From positions 1-57,217 of the forward strand of contig CALSCP010000656.1 of NCBI GenBank assembly GCA_943704425.1: a stretch of DNA of 57,217 bases, given 5' to 3'. The stretch comes from Ministeria vibrans ATCC 50519 (taxonomy: Eukaryota > Protista > Filasterea). The position numbers and the translations under genes were made by a program. Shown here in pieces: positions 23,222 through 47,774 of this stretch. How positions within the stretch are numbered: the first letter of the stretch is position 1; each line of letters begins with the position of its first letter. Under the pieces are notes generated by a model that was given only the letters and a program-made list of their open reading frames with translations, was not told the origin of the DNA and did no database searches.

Positions 23222-26200
23222 GAGAAAACGACAGACACTGTGCGGTCGCCAGGGGCCTTGGAGAAGGCTTTGAAGGCAGTCAATGGCCCGTGTGGGCACA
23301 CTGCATGTGCTCACATCACGCTGTGAGTCCCGTAAATGCCCCCAACGACCAGCGCAGGACATGACAGGCCAAGTTTTCGCCTTTCCGCTCCTCTCCGCTC
23401 TCCTTACCAACAACCAGGTCGTTATTTTCGTAGTAGCGGTTGCCCCAGGCATCTTCTCCCATCAAGGTGCCATCTCTGACCGTACCAGACCTGCACAATT
23501 CCACAGTGTCAAACAAGAACTCAAAAGCGCCTTCCGTACGTCCACATTTGCGTGTAGATGCGCTTCCACTGTCCCGTTCTAAACAAAGAGAGCCCTCTTG
23601 ACATGTTTCAACAGCGATTTTTTGAAATTTGTTATAATTGAGTAATGAGTTTTGACTTTTTTTTTGACTTTTCAATGACTTCTTTCATTGTCAAATCGAC
23701 CAGTTGACACTTGACAATTCTTGTTGTCGTCTTTATGGATCCTCGACCGGCCCGTCGAAGACAACCACAACAACAGCAGCCTGATGACGGAGACGATTCC
23801 CCTCCTCGTCGTCGTCGAGATTTTGACTACTACGCTGACAGTGCGGAATCGTCGTCGCCATCTCCGCCACCAACACCCCCGCGCGAGCCATCCGCCGCCC
23901 AACTTGCTTCCAGTGTCAAGTTAGACCTGGCTGAGAGTCGCTGGGAAGAACTCCCTGAGGCTCTCTTTGCCAATCGTCGTTTGAAGTCCCTCGATTTGTC
24001 TCACTCGCAACTGAAAACTTTGCCACCTCGCCTCTCTGCGCTATCGTCACTCGAGATGCTCGTTATACCCCATTCTCTTGTGCGTCTCATACCATCGTCG
24101 ATTGGTCGTTGTCGCAAGCTCAGGCTCCTCGACGTGTCTGGCTGCGAGCTCGAATCCCTCCCGCCGGACCTTGGCTCACTCCCCCACCTGGAGTCACTTA
24201 TTGCCTCGCACAATCGACTCACCACTGTGCCACGCGAGCTCTCACGGTGCCATGCACGTCTTCAACAGCTTGACCTCTCGCACAACCGGCTGGTGCGTCT
24301 TCCACCTGCCCTGGCGCTTCTCCATCGTCTCTCGTTTCTCCGCCTCCACGGCAATCCCAACCTTGTCGTACCCAAACCAATGGAAAACAACGCTTGCTTC
24401 CTGCCCGACAGACGACTAACCACCGACGACATCCGCTGCGTTCTTCACCTACTCAAGGCACACGAACTCCGTCGAGAGGCCTCTCTCACCGCAACAGCAC
24501 TAATGGTGCGGCGACAACCTGTCGTCTCGCCCTACCTCATCCGCGACATTCTCTCACATCTCTCCGATAGCGACTATCTTCCGCGTGCACGTGAGCTCAA
24601 CGCTTACAAGATCAAATTTCGCTAATAACTAATAATTATTAGTAAAACTAATAAATAACAGAAAGTACACTATACATCCGCCTGAGCGAGCGGCTGTGTC
24701 GACACCATCGATGACGAATGCACAAGGTCGGGCACAACAACAGCATCAGCATTAGCAGCAGCAGCAGCAGAGTCATCGCTAGTGACGGTGCTATTGCTAC
24801 CGCTGCTGTCGTTGTTGTTGTCATCGATGTTGTTGTTGTTGTTGTTGTCGTGAGCGCTCGTCGGTTCATCAGCAGAATTGGTAGTCGCGGGAGTAGTGAC
24901 AGTTGTTGCGGTTAAGGCTGTTGTGCTTGTTGTTGTTGTTGAGGGTGCCTTGTCTTTTGTTGCTATTGAACTCTCTGTCACGCGTCGGCGTTTGTGTGCA
25001 CTGTCGTCTGTGCGTGGCGGAGGCGACACAAAGTCATTGTCCATGTCCACATCGCTCACGGCAGACACACTCAGCTCGCTCACCAGAGAACTCACGGCCG
25101 GCTCTGACTTCTTCTTCTTCTCCGCCTCAGCTGTGGTTGTCGCTATGGTCGCTGTTGTTGATGATGAAACAGTCGGTCGTTTACGAGGTCGTGAGCGCGA
25201 CCGCGAACGAGATACAGGAGCACACGCTGTCATTGCCTCTTCGTTGTCCTCTTCGCGTCGCACTCGCTTGGGCGCAGGACTCGTTGTTGTGTCTGCCTCG
25301 AGTCCATTTGCCTTTCTATTGGGCGACACGGCCGTACTCTCTCCCCCATCGTCACTGGCCGACTCGTCGCCATTCGCCACAGTCGAAGGAGCCTTGCGCT
25401 TGCGCTCGGCGGCCGCACGCACACGCGCCGTCGGCTTGAGCGACTGCGTGTTACCCCAGTCCTCGTCCTCGTGCAACTCGGCACGTACAGCTGCGGCCGC
25501 CGCAAGATCCGCCTGACGCACCTCAGCAGCTCGACGGTACTCGTAGACTGGGTCGGTTTTCGAGAGAAGTGCGCGCAAGTGCATGCCCACCGCATCGCGA
25601 TACGCATCAAACTGGTCCTCGGGCGCATCCTCGGGATTCTTGCCGTAGCCTCCTTCAAACACAGACACAATGCGAGGCCCGTGTACACCGGCACAGCTCG
25701 AAATCGACTCGGCTATGTCAACAATGCTGCGTGTCATGGCGTAAAAGTCGGTGCTATTGAAAGACGCCAGTGCCATCCAATCGTCCTTGTGCGCGTCAAA
25801 ACCCGCCGAAATCATCACCAACTCAGGCTCAAATGCAACCATGGCCTCGCGCACACGATCCATCACTCCGGTGCCAAGCACGTCGCGCGTCCATTCGTAC
25901 GCTGCCGGCAGAGGGAAGTTGAGCACGTTGGGGTGCTTGTCGGCGCGCTCGTGCACCGTATTCGGGTAAATGCCCTCCTCGCACACATGGATGGAAATGA
26001 ACTGGTAGTTTTGCTCGCGCGGTCGCTTGTTGATCTCGCGCATGAGCAACTCTTCGGTACCGTTGCCGTGGTGCACATCAATGTCAATCACAGTGACGCG
26101 CTTCACACGAAGCACATCGTGTGCATAAACAGCGCCCAGTGCCACATTGTTGAAGAGGCAGAAACCCTGTGAGTCGGCGTGCAGCGCCACGCCCGCATAG

Positions 26201-29200: not shown

Positions 29201-29703
29201 GGAGAATCTAAAGCGCGCAACGTGTACAACACCGATACTACGCTACACTCTCAACGAGGCAAGAAGGATAACAGCGAACAAAGGTCAGTGGAGTCGACGA
29301 CACACGCGAACTTTTTTTTCGTTGGAAGGGTGTCGAAGACGGCAAAAGGGTCAAAAGTGCTACTTGACCCNNNNNNNNAAAAAAAAAAAGAGCGCCATTC
29401 GAAGAGACGCAGAGGAGATAGGTACCGTCAATGTCGTCAACGTCTACGGCATACAGGTCGACGGCGGTCATCTTGGGCCAGGCGCGTCGGCGAATGTCGT
29501 CGCGAACAAGTCCGCCGCGTCCGCGCGCTGCGTCGCGGATGGCAGCCGCGTCAACATGCGGCGTTGTGCGCACTGCCGTGTTGATGCGTCGAATGCGAGC
29601 CTCGATCATCGTGTGCGTCGCTAAGGAAAGCGACAGAGACACACAGAGAGACAGAAGAGAGAGTCAGTTTTGGGGTTTCGTGTTGACTTTTGGGATTACC
29701 CAT
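21262..29703 (-). CDS. TBC1D20: TBC1D20/Gyp8-like Rab GAP; first exons at 29703-29426, remaining exons at 23074-21262
   Basis: VDAAAIRDAARGRGGLVRDDIRRRAWPKM; QVEMDVHRSL; LYYYQ|GFNDVCSIVL; HLRDFM; WAITWFAHDI; RVYDFLLSSHPLAHLY; matching phase-1 junction across a 6.3-kb gap. Confidence 0.85.
21790..22100. repeat. Intronic degenerate minisatellite (agagaaacaaagtgat family)
   Basis: Reverse complement of the ctctatcactttgtttct unit also seen at 1-18 and 50323-50512. Confidence 0.75.
23408..23604 (-). CDS. NDUFA12: NADH dehydrogenase subunit NDUFA12, first two exons only
   Basis: Spliced MSRGLSLFRTGQWKRIYTQMWT|SGTVRDGTLMGEDAWGNRYYENNDLVVG then a GTAAGG donor; the expected RxRWV..VPPEW exon is absent. 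Confidence 0.8.
23735..24625 (+). CDS. Intronless leucine-rich repeat protein with a possible C-terminal F-box-like motif
   Basis: LKSLDLSHSQLKTLP, LRLLDVSGCELESLP, LQQLDLSHNRLVRLP; C-terminal SPYLIRDILSHLSDSDY. Confidence 0.85.
   Translation: MDPRPARRRQPQQQQPDDGDDSPPRRRRDFDYYADSAESSSPSPPPTPPREPSAAQLASSVKLDLAESRWEELPEALFANRRLKSLDLSHSQLKTLPPRLSALSSLEMLVIPHSLVRLIPSSIGRCRKLRLLDVSGCELESLPPDLGSLPHLESLIASHNRLTTVPRELSRCHARLQQLDLSHNRLVRLPPALALLHRLSFLRLHGNPNLVVPKPMENNACFLPDRRLTTDDIRCVLHLLKAHELRREASLTATALMVRRQPVVSPYLIRDILSHLSDSDYLPRARELNAYKIKFR
24670..29137 (-). CDS. Large class II-type histone deacetylase with low-complexity N-terminus, C3H zinc motif and coiled coil
   Basis: RPPGHHAG, GFCLFNNVA, IDIDVHHGNGTE, SAGFDAH, FEGGY; spliced RCQAKNQRG|GPCGKAPDGTGFCSAH. 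Confidence 0.85.
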
Positions 29704-31158: not shown

Positions 31159-32606
31159 CTACCAATCTAAATCGGTCCGTGAGCACACGCTCTGCCCTTC
31201 GTCAACTCTCTCCTTCTGTTCCGTCGCACTTGTGTGTGCCGGTGTTTCTGGCTTCTTCCAGTCGAATATTCCGCCCCGTTGACGGAAACTCTCGTCGTCA
31301 TAGCCACTTTGTGCAATTGCTTCTGCAACTGTCACGTCCAGCAGTGACTGCGATGGTGTCTTTCCGCCCTCAGAGCAGTTGAGGAAGCGCAGTTTCTCAT
31401 CGAGAATTAGATAGCTGTTCCGCATCAGATCGTTTCCTTCGGCCACTGGCAAAAACCGCTTGTGTCGCTCGCAAAACGCATCAAACTGCTCTGTTGTCAC
31501 AAGAAACTCCTTCACATTGCGCAAGTCTCCTTCGCGCCCGCTGTTTTCGCCCGCAATTTCCAAACACTGAAAGACCTATAAAAAAAAACAACAGGAAGAA
31601 ATTAGCAGGGATCTTTTTATATCTTCTCTGGCTCTACAAATTAAAAGCAAGAAAAACAAAAATCTTATTCTTTTCATATGTTATTAATTGAAAAAAAGAA
31701 GAAGAAGAAAAAGAAAGAATACCAATTGAAACAACAGACAAAATAATAATAATTGTTTACCTTCCAGCGCTTAATGAGACCCAAATCCTCGAGACCTTCA
31801 CTCATGTCTTCCATATAGTTGTGCGCATTGACCACCGTGTTCAACTTGAATGGAATACCCAGTTCGTGGCACATGTGTGCAACTTCCGTCACCACTTGTC
31901 GCTGAAAAGAAAAGTACAATAACATTAGTAGTTATTATAATTATTATTATTATTACAATCATCATAATATCTTTGATATGTTTGTTTTTCTGCTTACTTG
32001 AGAGCGATGTGATCCATCACTGCGTCCAATCAGTTCATTGGTTTCATCTTTGAAGCTGTCGCACGAGACGGCGAGGATGTCGATGTTGTCGCGATTGCGA
32101 AGCAACCAGGAGCGCTTGATTTTGGAACCGTTGCTCACAATGGTGACGCCCACTTTAAGCGTGTTGTGACAAAAGTCGCATAGTTGCTCCAGAAACTTGG
32201 GCTGTAAGAAGGGTTCGCCTCCGGCAAAGTTGATCTTTTGCATCCCAGCGTCCTATAATTTAGAAGAAGAAAAATGAATAATAAGAAAAATAATTATTCA
32301 AAAGGAATTTTTCCGGAATTTTTAAGAAATTTGCTTTTGTACCTTGAGTTTTTGGAGGACTTTCTTGGCGTCGTCGAGCTTGGCGACTTCGCTAGTGCGG
32401 GCTGTGTGATAGCAGAAGCCGCACTTGTAGTTGCACTGGCGGGTAATGTGGTAGTTGACACACGTTGGTGTTTTCTGCTCTGGCGTGTTTTTCGTCGCGC
32501 CTTTCCACAGTCGGCTGACGGCGAGCATCGACACGGACGACAGAAGGAAAAGGAACGCTGCCGATTGCTGATCAAAGGGAATGCTTGTAATCAAGTTGAC
32601 GAGCAT
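31159..32606 (-). CDS. RSAD2: Viperin, radical SAM ddhNTP synthase (exons 32606-32343, 32252-31998, 31901-31761, 31575-31159)
   Basis: [20 protein letters not shown] (CxxxCxxC), [37 protein letters not shown]|[26 protein letters not shown]-terminal LDW; N-terminal hydrophobic anchor. Confidence 0.96.
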
Positions 32607-33140
32607 TTTGTTGTGATGTGTTGTGTTTTTTTGTTGTTGTTGGTGTTTGTTTCGTTGGTGTTCTATCGTGCGCAGTCGTCTTGCTTGTGAGCGAGTGCTT
32701 ATAGACGTGGGAATGCCGAATGAGAGCGAAGAAAAGCAAGGTCAGTCTTTCAGGTGAAGTTGTGAGAAAAAGACTGATTGAAAAGAGCTTGGGGGATTTT
32801 CGGCTATTTGTTTTTTTCAACTCCACTCGACCAACAACTCAACCCGTAAACCCACTGTTTACTACGTAGTGAACCTCAGAGCGTTACGCATTATATGTGG
32901 AGTAGAACCATTTGCCAGTGGGTGGAAGGCGAACACTCACAGCAAGTGCCAAATGGCGACGACGGTCGCTTTTCTGTTCTTGAGTCTGTCAACTCCGGAA
33001 AAGACCTTGGTTGTTTGTTTTTCGACGGTGACTCAACCCAGAAATGTCTTTTTCTACTTCACTTTAGAGTTTAGATTTAGACTTCAGTCTTATTCACCAC
33101 TTTAAGACTCACATTACGACTCAAGAATACAGAATCCAGC

Positions 33141-33893
33141 ATGGACTCGGTTGTGTTGTACACATCTTTCAACAGTGCCGTTGGCGCACTCAACACCGTT
33201 AGCGAGAACAAGGGTCTGCGGCAAGCCATTGCCGAAGCCTTGGCGCAGCCCGTCACGATGGGAGAGACACTCGCACGATGGATTGTGGTCGAAGGCCTTG
33301 ATGGGGTGGGCAAGAGCACCGTGTGCACTGCGATTCGCGATCATTTTGGCGACCATGCTCGACTGTTTACCACGCCGCCCGACGACCTTGTAATTCTCCG
33401 CCCTCATTTTGACGGCACTCCCGAACACCAGAGACGGGCATACTATACGCTTGGCAACTACCTTGTCGCAGGACGCATCCGTGCCTGGCTTGCTGCCGAT
33501 CCGAGTCGCGTTGCCGTCTGCGATCGTCACTTCCTGTCGACGGCAGCGTACGCATTGGCGCGTCTCGACGTGGACGGACGCGTCGATGAAGCCGAGAGGC
33601 TTGCGTGCGGTGGCTGGCCGCAAGATTTGCCCTCGCCTGGCACCGTGTTTTTGTTGACACTTGACGAAAAGACCCGCACTGAGCGGCTCTACGCGCGGCA
33701 AGGTGGGGCGCAGAATTTGTCGGGGGAGGAGAAACTCATGGAGCGCAACCGAGCTCTCTCGACGGCCGTGAGTGCGCAATATGCGCGCCTTTGCCAGGCA
33801 AGCGAGAAACGCTTTCAAACTGTTTCAGTAGACGCGAGTCAAGAGAAGGCCAAGGTGTTGGAGTGTGTGTTGAAAATGTGTGTCAAACAATAA
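33141..33893 (+). CDS. CMPK2: CMPK2-like UMP-CMP kinase (thymidylate kinase fold), intronless
   Basis: IVVEGLDGVGKST P-loop; RRAYYTLGNYLVA, DRHFLSTAAYA and WPQDLPSP match the CMPK2 motifs RRAFYSLGNYIVA, DRYWHSTATYA and WPEDLLKP. Confidence 0.9.
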   Translation: MDSVVLYTSFNSAVGALNTVSENKGLRQAIAEALAQPVTMGETLARWIVVEGLDGVGKSTVCTAIRDHFGDHARLFTTPPDDLVILRPHFDGTPEHQRRAYYTLGNYLVAGRIRAWLAADPSRVAVCDRHFLSTAAYALARLDVDGRVDEAERLACGGWPQDLPSPGTVFLLTLDEKTRTERLYARQGGAQNLSGEEKLMERNRALSTAVSAQYARLCQASEKRFQTVSVDASQEKAKVLECVLKMCVKQ

Positions 33894-34009: not shown

Positions 34010-34789
34010 CTACGCCTTGACACCTTTTGCTTGCAAAAGTCCACACTCGTCAAGCGCACGCCACGTTGCCGGGACATACTCCGAGATGTACTGGAGAACC
34101 TTTCCTTTGGGCTGCACACTCTCATGGGGTGCACTGGGCTCTCCAAGTTCACGCGCAAGCTCGGTCACAATGCTTTCTGCATGCGCGCGATCGCCGCCTT
34201 CGCTCAGCATCACCTCCACCTCGGCAATGGAAGTGGAACTGAGAATGTGCCTGTCGGAATCCTCTTGGCTCCCCTCCTTCTTCTTCTCCTGAGAGGCAAG
34301 CGCCAGCAGCGAGCGGGGTGCCTCGAAGAAGTCGCAGCGGTCCACGTCGACCCGCACTCGCACACCGTCGTCGCGCAGCGGCAGCTCAAATGTGTCGCGC
34401 TGAGTGCGAATCGAGGCAAAACAGGCCAGCGCATGAGAGTGCATCCACGAGACAAGGCTGCGCGTGTTGTTGCGCGTGTCCTTGCGGATCTGCAGTGCGC
34501 GCATCAACTCCGTTTTGATCTCATCTTCCGCGCACATCTCTCGATAGGCGTCGACGCGCGGCGACGACTCGCCGACCGCCGCCATCACCATGGGGCTTTT
34601 CAATTCCCAGGCGCCGTTCCTCGAGCGAAGCCACATGTCCTGGCGAGCGAGCGTCGCGTCAGACTGGTCGACGTAAATGTCGTGAAGCACTTGAGACTTT
34701 GCGATGCGACCACACCGTTCCATGAGCAACTCACGCCCGCGCGCGCCCAGTCTAAACTTGATTTCAATCTCAAGAAGCGATCGAAGCAT
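34010..34789 (-). CDS. THTPA: CYTH-domain triphosphate tunnel metalloenzyme, thiamine-triphosphatase-like
   Basis: LEIEIKF (ExExK), DIYVD, DMWLRSRNGAWELKSP, AYREM, VDVD, IAEVEVML, GKVLQYI. Confidence 0.85.
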   Translation of the reverse strand: MLRSLLEIEIKFRLGARGRELLMERCGRIAKSQVLHDIYVDQSDATLARQDMWLRSRNGAWELKSPMVMAAVGESSPRVDAYREMCAEDEIKTELMRALQIRKDTRNNTRSLVSWMHSHALACFASIRTQRDTFELPLRDDGVRVRVDVDRCDFFEAPRSLLALASQEKKKEGSQEDSDRHILSSTSIAEVEVMLSEGGDRAHAESIVTELARELGEPSAPHESVQPKGKVLQYISEYVPATWRALDECGLLQAKGVKA

Positions 34790-35028
34790 ACTGACGATGA
34801 AAAATGATTGTGTGTGTGACTGTGTGAGAGTGTGTGTAACGGATTGTAAATCGGACATGATCGTTTAACTTTCTCTTTTTACTTTTATTTTCTTATTTTT
34901 TTTTTTGACTTTGTGCGTCTCGATCCGTTGAAAACTTGACATGTATCATACCATTGTGGTGTTGTGGACTTTTTTTTTTTACTAAAACCCCTTCTTGTTC
35001 TTTTCGATAGAGTGCACGGAATAGTTTC

Positions 35029-35478
35029 ATGTCAACAAAAACAAAAAAGACGCCTACCGACTTGGGGCTGGTGGAAGAGCTGCGCAAAGCGTTTGCACAG
35101 GCGAGTGACGAGGGGGGAAAGGATGTGAGCGAGCGGAACATGTTTGGAGGGGTGTGCTTTTGCGTGAATGGCAATATGGCGGGGGGAATCAATGGAGCCG
35201 CACTCATGATGAAATGCGACAAGGACATCGCCGTCAAGGAGGTTGCTCAGGAAGTGGGCGTCAACGCTGTGGAAATGCGGTTTACAGGCCGCGCATTGCG
35301 GGGGTTTTATCAAGTAGACGGACCTGTGTCCAAGGGAGCAGTGCACAAGTGTGCTGTGTACTCGTACAAACATGCACGGTCACTTCCTGCGAAAACCAAA
35401 GGGAAAGCACCGAAGCGCAAGCCGGATGTCAGCGAAGAAGGAGAAGACGAAGACAAGAAAAAGAAGAAGAAGAAATAA
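35029..35478 (+). CDS. TfoX N-terminal domain protein (bacterial type) with Lys-rich tail
   Basis: ERNMFGGVCFCVNGNMAGGI, MRFTGRALRGFYQV, ARSLPAK; intronless. Confidence 0.8.
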   Translation: MSTKTKKTPTDLGLVEELRKAFAQASDEGGKDVSERNMFGGVCFCVNGNMAGGINGAALMMKCDKDIAVKEVAQEVGVNAVEMRFTGRALRGFYQVDGPVSKGAVHKCAVYSYKHARSLPAKTKGKAPKRKPDVSEEGEDEDKKKKKKK

Positions 35479-35496
35479 TAAAACAAACACAATGTA

Positions 35497-37646
35497 TTAT
35501 TTGAAAGTGGACCCTCTGAGCGACGGTGGCATTTCGGCCATTAATCGTTCGTATCGCTCTTTCCATCGCGCAATCTCAGCCCGTTCTGCTTCCACTGATT
35601 TTGCATTAAGAAGTTGAGTGATTTGCGTTTCTCGTTCCTCCTAAAACAAAACACAATTGAAATTATATTAAAATCATAAAATATAATTATTATTAATAAT
35701 TAAATTGTTTCTTGTTGCGTACCTTTCGAGTGAGCGCCAACGAGAGAAGTTGAGTCAAATTTGCAATTTCTCCGCTCAATTCCTTTTCTCGTTCTCGTTT
35801 CATTTCCTCTTTTGCCACTGAGAGTTCCTCTGAAAACAAACAAGTCATTCATAAGATGAGTACAAATCGATTTTCGTACTGTTGCATTTCTTACGATTCA
35901 CTTTCTTTTGCTTTTCGCAAATTTCTCCAATTTCCAAAATGATTTTCTCTCTCTCACAATCTTGAGAAAACTACAAAAACACAATCGTTCGTAAGAATGA
36001 TGCCGATTGAATTGGTTCTCTTCTTTTTTTTTTCTTTTCGTACAGTCCACAAACGAAATTGATTTCTCAGTTGAGACTCATTTTCGCTCAATTGGTCCAC
36101 ATTTTGACTATGTATGTGGTCTGTTTCGTCCAAAGTTTTGCCGATTCGCTCTTTTTGCTCATTTTCCCTACAAAAACGCAACGACAATCAAAATTAATCA
36201 CAAAATAAATAAGTCTTTCTCACTGATCACAATCAGGTTTTCTTGCCACCCACTCCCCTCACTCAAACACACGCTACACCAATCAAACGTACAAGAGCCT
36301 CTGCTGCGCCACCGCACACTCCATCCGCTCTTCATAGCCCCGCCGTTCCCCTTCCAGTATCGCATCCCTCCGCTCTCGCTCCCGTTTCATGCGTGCATAG
36401 AACAGCTGATGCTCCACTGCTGCCTCTGCTTGCGACGTCAAAATTAACTGACGCGCCTCTGCGCCATCTCGAAGGTCTGTGCTTTCCAGTGCGCTCTCCA
36501 GACGCGTTTGGGCGTTTGCAGAATTGATTGATTCGAGTGCGAGTGCGTCAGTGCGCATTTGTGATTGAATGTGTGACAGTTGTGCAGTGCGCTCCTCCTC
36601 GTGTGCCGTCAGTGTCTCAGTCGCGGCATGTGCAAGACGCGCCTGTGTCGCAAGAGTCTCTGCAACGGCATTGTGTGCGTCACGTTCGCGTTGAGATGCG
36701 GCGAGTGCCTGTTGCTGAGCGGCGTGTGAGCGGTCGTGCTCTTGCAGTAGTTGATGGGTGCGCTGCTGCTCTTCGCGTTCGCGCGCGTTGCGCTGCGTTG
36801 CCTCTTCGATGCGCCGTGCTTCTTCTTGGCGAATGGCAATGAGTGTGTCGTGGGGTGTCGTTGTGGCGGTGACGGTGGTCGTCGTCGCGACGGTTTTACT
36901 CTTGGTGGTGAGTGATGCCCCTAGAAAGGCGAGGGTGGCGGCGACGCCTTGGGCGAGTGTGTCGCGCGGTGGAAAGCGCAGCTTGATGTTGCCGTCGATG
37001 ACAAGGAGCTCGGTGAGGTGTGAGAGGCGCCCCAGCGAGCGCGGCAGTTCCTCAATGAGGTTGTCGCGCAGGTCGAGGTGCACCAGCTGCAGCATAGACG
37101 TGGTCACGACGTTTGGGACCACATCCAGCTTGTTCCGTGCCAGCACCAGCTTCACGACATGCGTGCCCCAGTCGTCGGGCAGCGACACGAGTTGGTTGCC
37201 GGAGAGATCGACGACGCGCAAGCGAGTGAGCGACGGAAGAGCCGGGAAGACAGTCAGTTGGCAGTCGTGCACCAGCAGCGTCTCCAGGTCCGTCAGCGTG
37301 TCCAGCGCGTCGGCAGCTGTCGTCAGATTGTTGCAGCTGGCATCGAGGCATCGTTTTTGCCGCATTTTAATGATAGCAAAGAGTTCTTTGGGAATCTGAA
37401 AAATAGACAAGAAGTTTTGTTTTAAAGAAGTTCACAACAAGAAAACACGAGAGACACAAAGAATCAAGTGGGGCCAGGCACAGCAGCGGAGAGGGTGTAC
37501 GGTACCTCGAGGAGCTTGAGGCTGGCGAGGTTGGCGGTGGAGGACGGTGAGTTGTGCAGTTCCCATTCGCGCTTTTGCAGAAGGGCTTTGGACGCCTTGT
37601 CCGGCGACCCATATCGATGCTGATGGTGGTGCCGCAAGAATGGCAT
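35497..37646 (-). CDS. LRSAM1-like LRR + coiled-coil protein lacking SAM and RING domains (multi-exon)
   Basis: IPKELFAIIKMRQKRCL, LRRs, FPPRDTLAQGVAATLAFL, long coiled coil, last exon WKERYERLMAEMPPSLRGSTFK*. Confidence 0.75.
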
Positions 37647-38678: not shown

Positions 38679-41600
38679 ATGAAGCGTGTTACGGTTGTTC
38701 GCGACAATTGCCCTCTGAGAAGCGTGAAAGCAGATTCCCACGATGCGTTTGTCGTGCGCCTTAAGGCGTTGGGACATGTGCCAGCGCAAACACCCACAGA
38801 CAGAGTCGAAATATTTTTACTCAGTGGCAGCATTGTCGCGTGGGAAGACCTGTGTAATGGCACCTCTGAAGGCGAGCCTGACCATGTACGCGTTGTCGTG
38901 ACAGATGCGGCGGCGACTGCTGCTGCAGGCGGAGTAACAGCTTCATCCGCCCCTCACAACAAGAAATGTGGCTACACCCGGCCCGGCCGCCTGGCAACAT
39001 GCTGCCACATGCTCCAGTCCAACGGTTTGAGCGAGCTCGACCGGGCCTACGATGCAGCAGAGCGGGATGAGACGGATTTTTGCCAGGTATGAGGTAGAAA
39101 GGAGGTAGAAACTGAAACCATTTGTAAGAATTACTCAGACGCGTTTGCTACACCCACAGACATACAACGACATCATCAGACTCGCGATGCGCGCCTTTCT
39201 CACCGACACCATCTTCAACCTCAGCGACGACAAGAAGCTCGGCATCACAGCGTCGCTCAAGACGACAATGGCCACTGCAGACAGCCGTCGTATACGTCTC
39301 TACGCCGCGTTTCGAGCGACAGCCGCCAGGCTTGCCGACTGCGGCGTCGTGTTCACCGTGCAGCTCGACAGCAAAGATAAGGTTGTGGATTCGCTGCTGC
39401 GGTCGCCCCGCAAGGCCAAGCTACTCGCGCTGCTTCTGCATCGCAGCATTGACTCAGACGTGATCCGTAAGCACGTCGCTGCTCTCAGCGAGCTACTTGC
39501 CCGAGACTTCTTTGGCTACCCGCGCGACCTTTTCAAGGCCTTTCGTGCGCTCGACCGGCACGCTTCTCCCAATGCTTTGCCGCGCACTGTCGACGAGATC
39601 ATCGTCGACGCCGGCTTGGAACCCGCCAAGCGTAGCACAGAGACCACCGTCACGGTCAGCCCCCACTCTGAGGCGGCTCTCCGCCTCCGCCTTGCTCTCC
39701 ACCAGGTAAGCACGTTAGGAAGCTTACTCTACAATTTGTCGTCGGACTGATCTTCATTGTATTGTAGCTCGGAAAGGCCACTGACGTCGTACGCGCCATT
39801 CTCAGCTTCAACACGACCTCATCTACGCACGCCACATTGGCCGCCGCGCTCGCCGCCACCGGCATTGGCGAAAACACGGTGCCAATTGAGGACCATCCGG
39901 GCAACTGGGATTCGTACAGCTTGTGTCAGTCCATCATCAAGCTTAAAACAACGTCGTTTCAAGAGTTCTTCGCCGCCCAGTCGCTTGACATGCACGACCT
40001 CAGCGAACTTGTCCGTCTGGCTCAGGTGGTGTTCTCGCTGCGCAACGACTCTGTCCACTCGTTCGTCTCGAGCAAACGCATCGAGCGCGACTGGCCAAGC
40101 ATCATTGCTCTATGCGATGCTCTCGGTCGTGTTGCTGCTTGCGCTCACCCGGCCTCGGTTGCCCCGCTCGCCGAGGCTTCCACAGAGATTCACCGGTGTG
40201 CTTTTGCGCCTCTTCATCACGACCAATTGGAGCTCACCAACAGCAACATCAGCGTCCGTGCGGAAGCAAAAGGGGAAACCGTAGTCCTCAAGCTTGACGA
40301 TCGCGATCTCGCTTTTCTTCGCCTGCACATGGGCATGCTTCGCTTCATTGCGAGCGTCTTCCCGATCGTCAAAGCGGACCTTGAGCGCGTCGCCGCGGCT
40401 GCCCGAACCGGTGGCATCGTTCTACCAGCCCCCGTTATGACTCTTACAGCGAAAGCAGCAGACGCGCCTGCTCTACCGCCATGGGCTGCTATCGCGGCGG
40501 CTGCTCGCTGGGCTGCGGATGCCGGGGCTGTCCGGTGGATCCAATTGCACGACAACAATCGTTTGTACTTTGTCGACGCCTGGTGGACGCTTGACAGTCT
40601 TTTTCACTACCTTCCTCTTATGCTGAACCGTCACCAGCTTGACGGCATTCAGTTTGGTGCGACAATAAATTGCGTTGCACTGCAGCAAGTGCAGATTGAC
40701 GCCAGCGATTTCCGTGCAGTTCTGTGTGTGGTGAACGAGAGTCGCCACGAGCGCGATGTTCCTGTTGACGATGTCGACGAGTGTCTCAGCACAATGCAGG
40801 ACATTCTTTGGCAGGTTCTTAAGACGAGCAGCGCGAGCGTCAGGCAGGGCGCAGTGGGCGACGCTTCTTGCGCCCTCTCGCGACTCGTCAACGTACGCCT
40901 GGCGCTGCCTCAGCATCAGTTGCTGTCGTTTAATGTGCAGCACCCTGCGTGGTCTGACGAGGCTAAGCGCAAGTTCCGCGGGCGAGACATCTTCCGTGAT
41001 GCAATCTTTGACGCGTTGCATGTGCCAAACAAGCGCGCTGTCCTTGTCATGGCGCCCATGGGCTTTGGCAAGAGTGCACTGGCGGCGCACATCGCGTCTG
41101 GGTCAAGCAAGGTGTGCGTTGTATCCACAAGCGTGTGCTACTACCGCGATAGCGACAGCCTCAGCCCAATGCGTTTTGTTCGCAACCTCTTATCGGATCT
41201 GCGGCGCAACCTGTCACCCGAGTTTACTTTCCGCTGCACCGCGCTCAATGTGCCCACGTGCATCAACGATGGCGACGTTCTTCATATAATTGTCGAAAGC
41301 GTTGTTGAGGCGCTCCGCTCCATGAGTGCTCCGCCCGATTTCACTGTCAACGGCACCGTGTCTGTTGTGCTTGTCGATGGCATCGATGAGGCCGTCGCCA
41401 AGGGCAATCGTGAGCTGGTGGTTGTACTGCACGGCCTTGCACGCATGGTCCCCCCATGGCTGCGTGTGCTGGTGACGAGCTGTGACGATGCGGAGGTACT
41501 GGATGTTATCTCGGCGGACGCACGCGACTACGAAATGGTCTCGTTTGGTGCGCCCAAGTTGCGCCAGGCAGCCACCGACGACGTGATTGCGGTGCTACGT

Positions 41601-43918
41601 GAGTTCCTGAGGGAGAACCCGACTGTTGCGGCACGTGTGTCGGGTATTGATGAGAACAAATTTGCCGAGGTGTCCACCGGCCTCATGCTTTGGACGACAA
41701 CAGTGCTGAGGGAGATGTGCGACCGTGGCAACTTTGACTGGCTCTCTTGCCAGGGAATGGCGCAGCTCTACGATTGTCAATTTCGACTTCGCTTTGGCGA
41801 CTTGTTCAACGAACAAGTTCGACCTGTGTTTGAGGTGTTGCTGGCCGCGTTTGAGCCGCTGACGCTGGAGCAGCTTGCTCGCGTTGCATTTCCTTTCATC
41901 CGTGCGTCGCCGGATGAGACTCTTGCATTGGTGCGTCCCATGCTGGTGGAGCAGGCGGTGACTTCTACCGGAGGGACACGCGAGACGAGGTTTGGTGTGC
42001 AGCTAGCACTCGACAAGTGGCTGCGCGGCGACGGTGGTGTGAAACACAATTTTCGCATTGATGTTGCGCTTGGCCATGGGCGCTTGGCGAACGCTGGGTT
42101 TGGACAGCTCGACGGTGGAGGCGCGATTCCCGAGCCGTTGGGCTTGGATTTTTGCGCACCCGTGCTTGTGCGACATGTGGCAGAGAGTGAACAGGTTGTG
42201 ACGGGCGCTCAGTTTGGCCACGAGATGTGGCGTCGTGTGTATGAGGCGGTTGCGAAATGCCACCTGTGGAGTGACGAGCGGGCCTTTGGACACATGGCTG
42301 TTGCGTCTGCCGTCAAGGTATTTTTGGCGGCCAATGGAGATCCCAAGCTGGTTGTTGGCGACTCACTTCTAGCGAAGGTGGTGACGAATGGCGACGATAG
42401 TTTGGCGTGCGACCTCTTGATCAAGGCAGGTGCCGACCCGCTGACACCATCGACCAATGGTTGGACGGCGTTGTTCTCTGCGGCATATAGCGGACGCCTA
42501 GAGTGTATGCGGAAGGTCTTGGCGTATATTCGTGGACACTCCCAGGACGCACCAACTGTCGTGAATCAATGTTTGGAGGACACCGGCTCATCGCCATTGA
42601 AGCTGGTGTGCCGCTTCGGACACATTGCGATTGTGGAGTTGCTGCTGAGTGAAGGAGCCGACGTGAACCAAGTCGCCGGCGAATACTCGGCGCTGACGTC
42701 TGCTGTGCGCGAAGGACACATTGAGATTGTAGAGTTGCTTCTGGACGTGAGGAGCGAGCGTGATGCGGCAACGCGGGCGGACGTGAACCAAGTCGCCGGC
42801 GAGTACTCGGCGCTGACGACTGCTGTGCGACACGGACACATTGAGATTGTAGAGTTGCTTCTGGACGTGAGGAGCGAGCGTGATGCGGCAACGCGGGCGG
42901 ACGTGAACCAAGTCGCCGGCGAGTACTCGGCGCTGACGAATGCTGTGCGACACGGACACATTGAGATTGTAGAGTTGCTTCTGGACGTGAGGAGCGAGCG
43001 TGATGCGGCAACGCGGGCGGACGTGAACCAAGTCGCCGGCGNNNNNNNGCGCTGACGACTGCTGTGCGACACGGACACATTGAGATTGTAGAGTTGCTTC
43101 TGGACGTGAGGAGCGAGCGTGATGCGGCAACGCGGGCGGACGTGAACCAAGTCGCCGGTGGGTACTCGGCGCTGACGTCTGCGGTGCGACACGGACACAT
43201 TGAGATTGTAGAGTTGCTTCTGGACGTGAGGTGCGAGCGTGACGAGTCAACCCGCGCGAAGGTTGACCTCTTGGTCGGTACCCGCTGGCCGCTACGCTTG
43301 GCCGCACAGACCAATCGAATCGACCTTGTGAAATTGCTGCTGAAGCAAGGAGCGAATCCCTCTCTGGAGGTGCAGAACGGCTGCAAAACGTTCACTGCAT
43401 GGCGTTCTGCGCGCAGCGGAAGCGAAGCCCAGCGTCTCATTGGTTAGACCACACGATTGCTTCAGTTTGTCTGTTCTCACCCATTATTTTGTTCGTTTTG
43501 CTTCTCCTCTCGAACATGTACAGGGGATGCACAACGCTTGTCTCAGCAGTCCAACACTGCCCAGCGACAAAGGCAGGCAGGGCCCATGGAACGTACCGTT
43601 CCCTTCCGCAGTGGCGCAGGTCCAACAAGTGCGGCACCTGACGCGGACGGCCAATCGCGCTTTCCCCGACGCCAGACTTCATACGCTCGTGCTTCACAGC
43701 ATCCTGATCGCGGGCACACAGCCGGGAGCGCCCAATCGGACAATTGGCACCATCAGCGCCCCCCGCCACCGCGCGTCGACGACCCTGGCCCCTCCTCGCT
43801 TTCTGATGTCGATGGGTGGCAGGTCGTGCCCTCCAGACGCCGTCCACCGCCTCGCCGAACCCAAGATCGACCCGACTCCTATCATTGTCGCAGTGACGAC
43901 ACTCGTCAACGGTGGTGA
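38679..43918 (+). CDS. NLR-like STAND protein: unknown N-terminal region, NACHT-type NTPase, ankyrin repeats (4 exons; N gap inside the repeats)
   Basis: Walker A APMGFGKS; Walker B VVLVDGIDEA; PPWLRVLVTS; winged-helix-like LLAAFEPLTLEQL; ankyrin units ADVNQ..SALTxAVRHGHIEIVELLL; in-frame introns near 39088, 39705 and 43443. Confidence 0.88.
42660..43240 (+). repeat. Near-identical 120-bp coding tandem repeats (40-aa ankyrin unit), at least 5 copies
   Basis: Units start at 42660, 42780, 42900, 43020 and ~43139; N gap at 43042-43048. Confidence 0.95.
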
Positions 43919-46328: not shown

Positions 46329-47774
46329 ATGAAGCCTGCCATAACTGGACGCACTGCGACGCTAGCAGCCATGTCCTTTTCCTTGATTCCCGGCAACAAC
46401 GGATCAATTGTTGGCGTTGCCGATGTGGTCGAGGTGGACGACGCGACGGTCACCACTCTGGAGCGACTTGAACACGCCGCACAGGCACTCCTGGCGCACC
46501 ATCCCTTGCTGCGCACTCACTTTGTGCAGCAGACAGAATACACGTATGATTTGGTCGACGCGAATCGGGAGGCGGCGGCCTATGTGGAGCGGAGGGAGGT
46601 CGCGAGCGATGAGGCGCGCGCCGCGGCGCGTGACGTGGCCCCTTTGAGATGCTGCGACGCCGTCCCAGCGACATTCCCTTCCACATGCTGCTCCTTGTGT
46701 GCCCCTCCACCTCGAGTGCATCCTTGGTCATCTTCATGCACCATTCAATCGGGGATCTCCAGTCCATGGCAACGGCCCTCACCGACGCACTAGCCGAGCT
46801 CGACGACCCGGGCTCGACTAAAGGCGCCGCTGCTCGACGGCGTCGCTGCTGATGCTGATGCTGATGCTGCCGAGGTTGCCTCGATTGACCTCCCTCCATC
46901 TATCATCAGGGCGGTGCCCAAACACTGCGTGAGTTGGTGGAGTGTCATCAAATCGATTCCGTCGATGGGCCGCCTCTCGTCGCTTCCCAAGTTGGCTGCA
47001 AAGGAGGATCTACAGTTTCGCACTGCCGCATCACCCGATCCGGGCAACGTGGAAGACGCTATTCCCGGTCGCGTCGAGCACAAAATGCCTGTGGACACCC
47101 TCCTGGCAGCGGCGCGCGCCCACAAGACGACGGTGCAAGGCGCTCTGCAAGCGGCCCTGTGCTATGCCATTGTGGCCATGCGCATCCAGCAAGGACGCAT
47201 GCCCCATCCCAAGAGCCGCCTTTCCATGGCATCCACCGGTACTGTCGACCTGCGCCGACACCTCGCTGAGCCCCTCGACCCACGCACCGTCTCCAACTAC
47301 AGCTCTGGCGCATCTATCCTCGCCACGGTCAACGCAGCGGAGCTCTCGGCCGACTCGCCCTTTCCGCCCAAGGAGATCTTTTGGGCGCTCGCAACACAAC
47401 TTTCGCGCGACTTGCGTGCGGTCGCGACAAACGGGTCGATTTATGCTCTGATCAAGCTGCTTGATTTCATGGGCGCCAGGCGGGTAAAGAAGGCCTTTGC
47501 CGCACTGACAGAGGGATCGGGTATGACAAGTGTGGCGAATGTCGGGCGCATTGCTCTGCGTGGACCTCTGAAGCATATGCGGCTAAGTGCCGGTTTGACC
47601 ATCGAGCATGTGATGGTTGCGATTCGGGACGGAGTGGCAATGCACTGCAATTCGTGCGAGGGTATCCTAACGATGGTCATCAATTTCTCATTGCCCTCGA
47701 TGGACGCAACTGAGATGGAGCGCCTCCTCGAATTGGTGGTGGCTAATCTTACGCGTGCCAGCGTTGAGGTGTAG
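46329..47774 (+). pseudogene. Condensation-domain / PapA5-like acyltransferase with two frameshifts
   Basis: HHPLLRT, HHSIGD (HHxxxD), LLAAARAHKTTVQGAL, VDLRRHL, FWALA, VANVGR spread across three ORF pieces. Confidence 0.7.

What the first reader, a model, noticed from the sequence alone, without database searches (positions are those of the whole stretch)
32343..33893. Vertebrate-style head-to-head RSAD2/CMPK2 arrangement outside vertebrates
Seen: the start codons at 32606 (-) and 33141 (+) share a 534-bp spacer. The kinase has CMPK2-specific motifs but lacks the long vertebrate N-terminal extension. Known: vertebrate RSAD2 and CMPK2 are adjacent, divergent and co-induced by interferon, and some prokaryotic viperins are linked to kinases. 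Inference: either the linkage predates animals and interferon, or it arose convergently.
Basis: partly seen in the sequence, partly recalled or inferred. Interest (0 to 1): 0.82.

Follow-up and report, generated by a model that had tools for sequence, protein, structure and literature searches.

The report
Protist viperin and CMPK2-like kinase pair
An unidentified microbial eukaryote carries the antiviral enzyme viperin back-to-back with a CMPK2-like nucleotide kinase, as vertebrates do, but this conserved linkage across the tree of life was already published in 2023, so the locus is one more example and not a discovery.

Summary
A four-exon viperin gene (minus strand, ATG at 32606) and a single-exon 250-aa kinase (plus strand, ATG at 33141) diverge from a 534-bp spacer.

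The viperin is the animal type. It is 50-55% identical to animal RSAD2, has the CxxxCxxC motif, and has the Cys/Lys pocket linked to CTP selectivity.

The kinase scores far closer to CMPK2 than to thymidylate kinase: 145 bits against an animal-CMPK2 profile and 65 against a Tmk-like profile. It lacks the animal N-terminal domain. Trees do not resolve whether it is a true CMPK2 orthologue.

Of 80 metagenome loci encoding relatives of this kinase, 44 also carry a viperin within 2 kb. Three other eukaryote-like contigs and a rodent show the same divergent orientation.

Shomar et al. (bioRxiv 2023) already reported that viperin-kinase linkage is conserved from prokaryotes to eukaryotes. They also reported that the CMPK2 N-terminal domain is a late, mainly deuterostome, addition. 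This locus is therefore a new member of a known kind.

The organism could not be named. "Holozoa" is unproven, and a metazoan origin is unlikely.

One new lead: a thiamine-triphosphatase-like CYTH gene flanks the pair here and lies between the two genes in a second, distant eukaryotic contig.

The parts
32343..32606 (-). Viperin exon 1 (88 codons): hydrophobic N-terminal helix and the radical-SAM CxxxCxxC motif
   Evidence: ORF and splice donor CTCAAG|GTAC. TIGR04278 viperin 68 bits, model positions 48-99. 69% identity to Octodon RSAD2 exon 1.
32412..32435 (-). CNYKCGFC (Cys58, Cys62, Cys65): the [4Fe-4S] cluster-binding motif of radical-SAM enzymes
   Evidence: Translation. The role of the motif is established knowledge of the radical-SAM family.
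32253..32342 (-). Viperin intron 1 (90 nt, GT..AG, phase 0, 20% GC)
   Evidence: It lies 7 nt upstream of the animal intron 1 (phase 1, in the Gly codon of EAG^M) seen in Octodon, Lingula and Asterias.
31998..32252 (-). Viperin exon 2 (85 codons): GGEPF SAM-binding region
   Evidence: TIGR04278 92.8 bits, model positions 100-183. Pfam Radical_SAM 31.7 bits.
31902..31997 (-). Viperin intron 2 (96 nt, phase 0)
   Evidence: No counterpart in the Asterias gene.
31761..31901 (-). Viperin exon 3 (47 codons)
   Evidence: NF038283 30.7 bits and TIGR04278 23.8 bits, model positions 191-232.
31576..31760 (-). Viperin intron 3 (185 nt, phase 0) between RWK and VFQC
   Evidence: Same position and phase as intron 4 of Asterias rubens RSAD2.
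31159..31575 (-). Viperin exon 4 (138 codons plus stop): C-terminal nucleotide-binding extension, ending in ...DLDW
   Evidence: TIGR04278 121 bits. Best PDB matches: mouse viperin 5VSL 109.5 bits, Nematostella 7N7H 107 bits, fungal 7N7I 83 bits.
31360..31377 (-). Beta-8 loop FLNC(287)SEGGK(292): Cys and Lys at the positions of mouse Cys314 and Lys319, the CTP-selective pocket
   Evidence: Alignment to 5VSL/6Q2P. Residue roles from Shomar et al.. Coordinates.
32607..33140 (.). 534-bp divergent intergenic spacer, a candidate bidirectional promoter
   Evidence: No ISRE core. Only short weak repeats. Promoter function was not tested.
33141..33893 (+). CMPK2-like (viperin-associated) nucleotide kinase, 250 aa, single exon
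   Evidence: Pfam Thymidylate_kin 60.5 bits. 81.7 bits and 39% identity to Octodon CMPK2. 145 bits against an animal-CMPK2 profile versus 65 against a Tmk-like profile. PADLOC VakA 27.6 bits and PDC-M51B 67.2 bits.
33294..33320 (+). P-loop GLDGVGKST (Gly52-Thr60)
   Evidence: Invariant columns E51 G52 L53 D54 G57 K58 T60 in alignment A1.
34010..34858 (-). CYTH / thiamine-triphosphatase-like gene (282 aa), tail-to-tail with the kinase (116 bp apart). A possible third member of the cluster.
   Evidence: Pfam CYTH 37.2 bits. Best PDB matches are human and mouse ThTPase at 52.8 bits. A homologue lies between viperin and kinase in L029.

Best explanation
This is a native eukaryotic antiviral gene pair. 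A CTP-type viperin (ddhCTP synthase) and a CMPK2-like nucleotide kinase are transcribed divergently from a 534-bp spacer.

By analogy with human CMPK2/RSAD2 and with bacterial pVip plus its associated kinase, the kinase would raise the local supply of CTP. Viperin would then convert CTP, by radical-SAM chemistry, into 3'-deoxy-3',4'-didehydro-CTP, a chain terminator for viral RNA polymerases.

The pairing is an inherited, selected linkage that is widespread in prokaryotes and eukaryotes. It is not a vertebrate or interferon-era invention.

Shown here: gene models, family assignments, conserved catalytic and pocket residues, and recurrence of the pairing. Inferred: enzymatic activities, co-regulation from a shared promoter, and the antiviral role.
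For: Viperin:
- The four exons are colinear on TIGR04278.
- They are 50-55% identical to animal RSAD2 over about 280 aa, compared exon by exon.
- CxxxCxxC is present.
- Cys287 and Lys292 sit at the positions of mouse C314 and K319.
- One of the three introns is at the same position and phase as a starfish intron.

Kinase:
- The best 150 of 556 hits include many proteins of 417-480 aa with the match in the C-terminal half, which is the CMPK2 architecture. One is annotated CMPK2 of Octodon degus.
- Profile scores are 145 (animal CMPK2), 115 (prokaryotic viperin-adjacent kinases) and 65 (Tmk-like) bits.
- It hits PADLOC VakA.
- P-loop, DR and LID arginines are invariant in the alignment.

Linkage:
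- 44 of 80 metagenome loci with a kinase relative have a viperin within 2 kb.
- Kinase-radical-SAM fusions exist among the relatives: P0083, P0055 and P0167.
- The divergent orientation recurs in the eukaryote-like contigs L003, L029 and L091, and in Octodon.
- Every kinase taken from a viperin-less locus falls in the Tmk-like clade or on an unstable branch beside it, except L053, which groups with the L029 kinase.

Native origin: GC3 of the pair is 0.57-0.72 against 0.60-0.73 for neighbouring genes.

Literature: Shomar et al. 2023.
Against: - The phylogeny is unresolved. The window kinase plus P0041 sit on a basal polytomy. The AU test does not reject forcing them with the Tmk clade (p 0.318) or with animal CMPK2 (p 0.466).
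- No expression data exist, so co-regulation is unproven. No ISRE-like core is present.
- Three invertebrate loci checked (Potamilus CMPK2, Lingula RSAD2, Asterias RSAD2) have no partner within 10 kb. The linkage is therefore not universal.
- The nearest kinase by identity, P0040, has no radical-SAM neighbour.
- The full-length viperin was never scored as one protein, because the exons were not joined.
Confidence: 0.8

Rival explanations
1. A housekeeping thymidylate kinase happens to lie next to viperin. There is no functional coupling.
For: The only Pfam family above threshold is Thymidylate_kin. The AU test cannot reject a grouping with the Tmk clade. P0040, the relative with the highest identity, has no viperin neighbour.
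Against: The kinase scores 50 bits on TIGR00041 dTMP kinase, below the 83-bit cutoff. PDB thymidylate kinases score 18 bits or less, and no human TMPK hit appears even at E<=10. The CMPK2 profile scores 145 bits against 65 for Tmk-like. Pairing with viperin is seen in 44 of 80 loci of relatives and in three other eukaryote-like contigs.
Confidence: 0.05
2. This is a recent horizontal transfer of a prokaryotic pVip-kinase operon into this eukaryote, so the arrangement says nothing about ancient eukaryotic linkage.
For: Prokaryote-like contigs very often carry viperin plus this kinase family. The window also holds bacterial-type domains: TfoX_N, PapA_C and GH141_M.
Against: - The viperin scores higher on the eukaryote-type model TIGR04278 than on NF038283 in three of four exons.
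- It is closest to mouse and Nematostella structures.
- It has the Cys/Lys CTP pocket, which Shomar et al. report only in eukaryotes.
- It has three spliceosomal introns, one shared with a starfish.
- It has host-like GC3.
- Prokaryote-like loci are co-directional or fused, not divergent.
Confidence: 0.04
3. The linkage arose convergently in this lineage. Viperin and a CMPK2-like kinase were re-associated independently of the vertebrate pair.
For: The kinase is not inside the animal CMPK2 clade, which has SH-aLRT 95. Three invertebrate loci lack the partner within 10 kb. Shomar et al. themselves document convergent recruitment of CMPK1 in fungi.
Against: The same divergent orientation is found in four eukaryote-like contigs and a rodent. 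Forcing the kinase with animal CMPK2 costs only 1.5 lnL units. The kinase family is viperin-linked in prokaryotes too.
Confidence: 0.15
4. The contig is metazoan, or it is a chimeric assembly, so the pair is not 'outside animals'.
For: The viperin is as similar to animal viperins as animal viperins are to each other's distant members. One intron position is shared with a starfish. Two short N runs exist, at 29371-29378 and 43042-43048.
Against: - At least 17 Pfam-supported genes lie in 57 kb, and introns are 90-185 nt.
- The HDAC6-like protein is at most 31% identical to any animal protein in the list and 35% identical to Diphylleia rotans.
- The kinase lies outside the animal clade and lacks the N-terminal extension.
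- Proteins identical to the window's CYTH and TfoX products occur on short environmental metagenome contigs.
- The pair and the CYTH gene lie in one gap-free stretch of uniform composition.
Confidence: 0.06

Closest known systems
Vertebrate RSAD2 (viperin) / CMPK2 divergent, interferon-induced gene pair
   Same: The two protein families are the same and the orientation is head-to-head, as confirmed in Octodon degus. The viperin has the CTP-type Cys/Lys pocket, an N-terminal hydrophobic helix and a C-terminal ...DW. The kinase domain shares the CMPK2 motifs.
   Different: The spacer is 534 bp here and about 7.9 kb in the rodent. The kinase is 250 aa and lacks the roughly 200-aa animal N-terminal region. 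No ISRE core is present. The kinase is not inside the animal CMPK2 clade. Intron 1 of viperin is offset by 7 nt from the animal intron.
Viperin-associated kinases across the tree of life (Shomar et al. 2023, doi 10.1101/2023.09.13.557418); prokaryotic pVip + VakA and pVip-kinase fusions (PADLOC)
   Same: The kinase belongs to this viperin-linked family. It scores 115 bits against a profile of prokaryotic viperin-adjacent kinases and hits PADLOC VakA. 44 of 80 relatives sit next to a viperin. This locus fits the published pattern of a linkage conserved into eukaryotes.
   Different: Prokaryote-like loci are co-directional operons or fusions, whereas this one is divergent with separate promoters and introns. 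This particular organism and locus were not identifiable among published examples.
Thymidylate kinase (bacterial Tmk / eukaryotic DTYMK)
   Same: Same Pfam family and P-loop NMP-kinase fold class.
   Different: The kinase is below the TIGR00041 cutoff. It scores 18 bits or less to PDB TMKs. It has TPP where E. coli Tmk has TREPGG. E. coli Tmk groups with a separate clade made of kinases from viperin-less loci.
Mammalian 25-kDa thiamine triphosphatase (THTPA, CYTH/TTM family). This comparison concerns the neighbouring gene at 34010..34858.
   Same: It is the best PDB match, 52.8 bits to 3BHD. ExExK and the WLR-R block are conserved. From my own recollection, not tested here, the Trp at the position of human W53 is conserved both here and in L029.
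   Different: It has about 50 extra residues. Its substrate is unknown. It is physically linked to viperin and the kinase in two eukaryotic contigs. To my knowledge the vertebrate THTPA gene is not linked to RSAD2/CMPK2; this was not tested here.

Membership tests
Viperin (RSAD2; radical-SAM ddhNTP synthase) | CxxxCxxC [4Fe-4S]/SAM motif | tested here: met
   CNYKCGFC in exon 1.
Viperin (RSAD2; radical-SAM ddhNTP synthase) | Full-length colinear match to curated viperin models | tested here: met
   The four exons hit TIGR04278 at model positions 48-99, 100-183, 191-232 and 233-342. On NF038283 the exon scores sum to about 208 bits against a cutoff of 180. Scores are per exon; the joined protein was not scored.
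Viperin (RSAD2; radical-SAM ddhNTP synthase) | C-terminal extension with a beta-8 loop nucleobase pocket (Cys/Lys = CTP-selective) | tested here: met
   FLNCSEGGK aligns to mouse FLNCTGGRK.
Viperin (RSAD2; radical-SAM ddhNTP synthase) | Production of ddhCTP and antiviral activity | not testable with these tools
   Needs expression plus LC-MS and infection assays.
CMPK2-like / viperin-associated kinase | Thymidylate_kin-type P-loop NMP kinase domain with intact P-loop, DR motif and LID arginines | tested here: met
   Pfam 60.5 bits. Invariant columns in A1.
CMPK2-like / viperin-associated kinase | Closer to CMPK2 than to Tmk/DTYMK | tested here: met
   145 versus 65 bits on clade profiles. 81.7 bits to Octodon CMPK2 versus 39 bits to a named dTMP kinase and 18 bits or less to PDB TMKs.
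CMPK2-like / viperin-associated kinase | Monophyly with animal CMPK2 in a phylogeny | tested here: inconclusive
   The kinase sits on a basal polytomy. AU p is 0.466 when held with animal CMPK2 and 0.318 when held with Tmk.
CMPK2-like / viperin-associated kinase | Genomic linkage to a viperin gene | tested here: met
   The 534-bp divergent spacer. Recurrence of the pairing.
CMPK2-like / viperin-associated kinase | Human-type N-terminal domain with mitochondrial targeting | tested here: not met
   Absent. According to Shomar et al. this domain is a deuterostome addition, so it does not define the wider family.
Interferon-stimulated bidirectional RSAD2/CMPK2 locus | Head-to-head orientation | tested here: met
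Interferon-stimulated bidirectional RSAD2/CMPK2 locus | ISRE/IRF elements in the shared upstream region | tested here: not met
   No GAAANNGAAA in 32607..33140. There are 6 matches elsewhere in the window against 3.4 expected by chance.
Interferon-stimulated bidirectional RSAD2/CMPK2 locus | Co-induction on infection | not testable with these tools
   Needs transcript data.
CYTH / thiamine triphosphatase (neighbour gene) | CYTH domain with N-terminal ExExK | tested here: met
   Pfam CYTH 37.2 bits. LEIEIKF motif. ThTPase is the best PDB hit.

The most novel reading that the evidence does not exclude
In some microbial eukaryotes the antiviral module has three genes, not two: viperin, a CMPK2-like kinase and a thiamine-triphosphatase-like CYTH (triphosphate tunnel) enzyme.

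The CYTH gene abuts the kinase in the window. It lies between viperin and the kinase in the unrelated contig L029. The three proteins are only about 55%, 33% and 24% identical between the two loci, and no other flanking gene is shared.

The CYTH enzyme might act on the triphosphate of ddhCTP or CTP, for example to limit self-toxicity or recycle the product. That mechanism is a guess.
Probability: 0.3. Interest if true: 0.55.

Novelty: new member of a known kind. Interest (0 to 1): 0.3.

Why it matters
The locus adds an intron-bearing protist example to the published evidence that viperin and a CMPK2-type kinase have stayed physically linked since before animals and interferon. It is a rare case of operon-like functional linkage persisting in eukaryotes.

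It also supports two smaller points:
- The divergent orientation, as opposed to the co-directional or fused prokaryotic layout, recurs in eukaryote-like contigs.
- A ThTPase-like CYTH gene may be a further partner. If confirmed, this would point to an unstudied step in ddh-nucleotide metabolism.

The headline idea itself is not new.

Tried and rejected
Organism identification:
- Exact look-ups of eight window ORFs found only the CYTH and TfoX proteins, on unnamed metagenome contigs of 1.4-1.6 kb.
- A search with the HDAC domain gave nothing above 35% identity. The best by identity was Diphylleia rotans, which is not diagnostic.
- Rfam and tRNA scans of the window found nothing.
- Sample accessions are not mentioned in any searchable paper.

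Kinase searches and trees:
- The first word-indexed search returned only unnamed or 'thymidylate kinase' metagenome proteins, because of its length filter.
- PDB holds no close relative.
- Two trees (175 and 113 rows, quick method) and two AU tests did not place the kinase.

Microsynteny in invertebrates:
- Potamilus, Lingula and Asterias show no partner within 10 kb.
- Look-ups for Nucella and Nematostella found no record.

Spacer: there is no ISRE core. The bacterial-type promoter and terminator scan is irrelevant for a eukaryote. Only weak short repeats were found.

CYTH as a general viperin neighbour: a Pfam census of 145 neighbour ORFs from 46 viperin-plus-kinase loci, mostly prokaryote-like, did not show CYTH among the 25 commonest families listed. 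PADLOC has no match for it.
Full report
OBSERVATION

The coordinates are right. On the minus strand a four-exon gene starts at the ATG at 32606. Its exons are 32606..32343, 32252..31998, 31901..31761 and 31575..31162, with the stop codon at 31161..31159. The three introns are GT..AG, phase 0, 90, 96 and 185 nt long, and about 20% GC against about 50% for the exons. On the plus strand an uninterrupted 250-codon ORF runs from 33141 to 33893. The two start codons are separated by exactly 534 bp.

Every viperin search was made exon by exon, by reference.

WHAT THE TWO GENES ARE

Viperin:
- The four exons match the NCBIfam viperin model TIGR04278 colinearly, at model positions 48-99, 100-183, 191-232 and 233-342 (68, 93, 24 and 121 bits). 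On the general viperin model NF038283 they sum to about 208 bits, against a cutoff of 180.
- Exon 1 carries CNYKCGFC.
- Exon 4 is closest to mouse viperin (5VSL, 109.5 bits) and Nematostella viperin (7N7H, 107 bits). It is further from fungal viperins (83 bits).
- Compared exon by exon with 120 named viperins, it is 50-55% identical to insect, fish, bird and echinoderm RSAD2 over about 280 residues, with no taxon standing out.
- The beta-8 loop reads FLNCSEGGK against mouse FLNCTGGRK. Cys and Lys therefore occupy the positions of mouse C314 and K319. Shomar et al. show that these residues define the CTP-selective pocket, and they found it only in eukaryotes.

Kinase:
- It matches Pfam Thymidylate_kin at 60.5 bits but falls below the curated dTMP-kinase cutoff, at 50 against 83 bits.
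- It has no PDB relative better than 18 bits.
- Against 1.84 billion representative proteins the best hit is only 104 bits and 40% identical. Many of the top hits are 417-480 aa long with the match in their C-terminal half. One is annotated 'UMP-CMP kinase 2, mitochondrial' from Octodon degus (81.7 bits, 39% identity, residues 258-445). Others are from molluscs.
- Relatives include kinase-radical-SAM fusions, among them a Cladocopium ARM-kinase-viperin protein.
- On profiles built from tree clades, the window kinase scores 145 bits against animal CMPK2, 115 against prokaryotic viperin-adjacent kinases and 65 against Tmk-like kinases. E. coli Tmk scores only 31 bits on the CMPK2 profile.
- PADLOC's viperin-associated kinase model VakA is also hit.
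- The motif blocks EGLDGxGKST, TPP, R..FD, RRAYY.LGNY, DR..ST.AY and WP.DL, and the LID arginines, are shared with CMPK2-clade proteins.
- The protein begins where residue 180-200 of animal CMPK2 aligns. No exon resembling the animal N-terminal region exists in the window.

PHYLOGENY

Phylogeny does not settle orthology.
- In a 175-row tree and in a 113-row tree rooted with E. coli Adk and Cmk, the window kinase is sister to P0041 (SH-aLRT 95-97). The pair sits on a basal polytomy.
- It lies outside the animal CMPK2 clade (SH-aLRT 95).
- It also lies outside the clade joining E. coli Tmk with most of the kinases from viperin-less loci (five inside it, a sixth, L055, on an unstable long branch beside E. 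coli Tmk; the seventh, L053, groups with the L029 kinase). That clade has SH-aLRT 89 and the tool gave a long-branch warning.
- AU tests reject neither a forced grouping with Tmk (lnL difference 7.2, p 0.318) nor one with animal CMPK2 (lnL difference 1.5, p 0.466).
- The assignment 'CMPK2-like' therefore rests on similarity, motifs and genomic association. It does not rest on a resolved tree.

IS THE LINKAGE REAL?

Yes.
- Of 80 JGI metagenome loci encoding relatives of the kinase, 44 carry a viperin within 2 kb. Nearly all of these are co-directional or fused, the prokaryotic layout.
- P0041, the sister of the window kinase, sits on a 6.3-kb contig (L003) with split PPDK exons. An intronless viperin there is head-to-head with the kinase.
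- L029 is a 22-kb contig flanked by Brr2-like and CPSF73-like genes. It has viperin (minus), then a CYTH gene (plus), then the kinase (plus).
- L091 carries HSP90 and F-box genes. It has viperin (minus), three genes, then the kinase (plus).
- Octodon degus has RSAD2 (minus) about 7.9 kb upstream of CMPK2 (plus).
- The divergent orientation thus recurs in eukaryote-like DNA.
- Three invertebrates checked (Potamilus, Lingula, Asterias) had no partner within the 10-kb flanks, so the linkage is not universal.

NATIVE OR FOREIGN? METAZOAN?

- GC3 of the pair (0.57-0.72) matches neighbouring genes (0.60-0.73). The only N runs, of 8 and 7 nt, lie outside the pair.
- Intron 3 (RWK|VFQC, phase 0) is at the same position and phase as intron 4 of Asterias rubens RSAD2. 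That site is a typical AG|G proto-splice site, so parallel gain is possible.
- Intron 1 lies 7 nt upstream of the intron shared by Octodon, Lingula and Asterias. Intron 2 has no starfish counterpart.
- The window holds at least 17 Pfam-supported genes in 57 kb.
- Its HDAC6-like protein is at most 35% identical to any named protein, the best being Diphylleia rotans.
- Its CYTH and TfoX proteins occur, identical, on short environmental metagenome contigs.
- A metazoan origin is unlikely. The organism could not be named, and 'Holozoa' is unproven.

MECHANISM

Inferred from human CMPK2/RSAD2 and bacterial pVip, as summarised: the kinase boosts CTP supply, and viperin converts CTP to the chain terminator ddhCTP. 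The conserved catalytic and pocket residues are shown here. The activities, the co-regulation and the antiviral role are not shown. The spacer has no GAAANNGAAA ISRE core.

COMPARISON WITH WHAT IS KNOWN

Shomar et al. 2023 (doi 10.1101/2023.09.13.557418) reported the following:
- Nucleotide kinase genes lie within three genes of 12% of bacterial, 5% of archaeal and 70% of fungal plus metazoan viperins.
- Most of these kinases are related to the CMPK2 kinase domain.
- The association was vertically inherited.
- Viperin-kinase fusions exist.
- The human-type CMPK2 N-terminal domain is essentially a deuterostome innovation.

This locus is a further member of a known kind.

SIDE OBSERVATION

The gene tail-to-tail with the kinase (34010..34858) encodes a CYTH protein whose best PDB matches are mammalian thiamine triphosphatases. 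Its homologue lies between viperin and the kinase in L029. It scores Pfam CYTH 63.7 bits there and aligns end to end with the window protein at 24% identity, E about 1e-11 to 1e-14 depending on the BLAST search.

The same three families are therefore clustered, in different orders, in two diverged eukaryotic contigs that share no other neighbour. [quoted passage not shown] No searchable paper pairs viperin with thiamine triphosphatase.

With two cases this is only a lead. CYTH is not among the 25 commonest neighbour families listed for the mostly prokaryote-like loci.

No contig taken for human was met.

Noticed in passing
window 34010-34858 (-); L029 6175-7248 (+): A thiamine-triphosphatase-like CYTH gene is an immediate neighbour of the viperin/kinase pair in the window. 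It lies between the two genes in the distant eukaryote-like contig L029. It may be a third module member.
   Followed up: partly
window 35029-35478 (+): A 149-aa protein with a TfoX_N domain (37 bits), a domain I know mainly from bacteria (my recollection, not tested here), lies divergent from the CYTH gene across 170 bp. An identical protein occurs on a Logan contig from run SRR23272272.
   Followed up: partly
window 39837-43055 (+), 36283-37410 (-), 23711-24625 (+): A STAND-type NTPase (NPHP3_N/NACHT-like, TANC1-like wHTH, ankyrin repeats) and two LRR proteins lie within 10 kb of the viperin cluster. The neighbourhood may be enriched in immune-type architectures.
   Followed up: no
L091 1959-2363 (+) next to viperin 2477-3474 (-): In another eukaryote-like contig the gene next to viperin is a NUDIX hydrolase. 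This is a second kind of nucleotide-phosphate hydrolase beside a viperin.
   Followed up: no
window 31576-31760 (intron 3) and 32253-32342 (intron 1); L010, L009, L008: Viperin intron 3 is at the same position and phase as a starfish RSAD2 intron. Intron 1 is shifted 7 nt from the intron shared by rodent, brachiopod and starfish.
   Followed up: yes
proteins P0055/L017, P0083, P0167, P0069, P0160, P0065, P0072: Relatives of the kinase come in several architectures: ARM-repeat-kinase-viperin (Cladocopium), kinase-viperin and viperin-kinase fusions, tandem P-loop kinase pairs, and DUF3293-kinase fusions.
   Followed up: partly
window 46914-47774 (+) and 54813-55856 (+): ORFs with domains I take to be bacterial-type (PapA_C condensation-like; GH141 insertion domain) sit among ordinary eukaryotic genes. 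They are possible old horizontal acquisitions.
   Followed up: no
window 29371-29378 and 43042-43048: Two short N runs (8 and 7 nt), presumably small assembly gaps. Neither lies inside the viperin-kinase-CYTH stretch.
   Followed up: yes
L023, L024, L032, L047, L049, L058, L061 (about 50 bp downstream of the kinase): Seven ORFs among the neighbours of the viperin/kinase pairs match HNH_5. They are probably the ~120-aa ORFs that directly follow the kinase in these related prokaryote-like contigs, though the census did not list which ORFs matched. They may be a further component of those operons.
   Followed up: no
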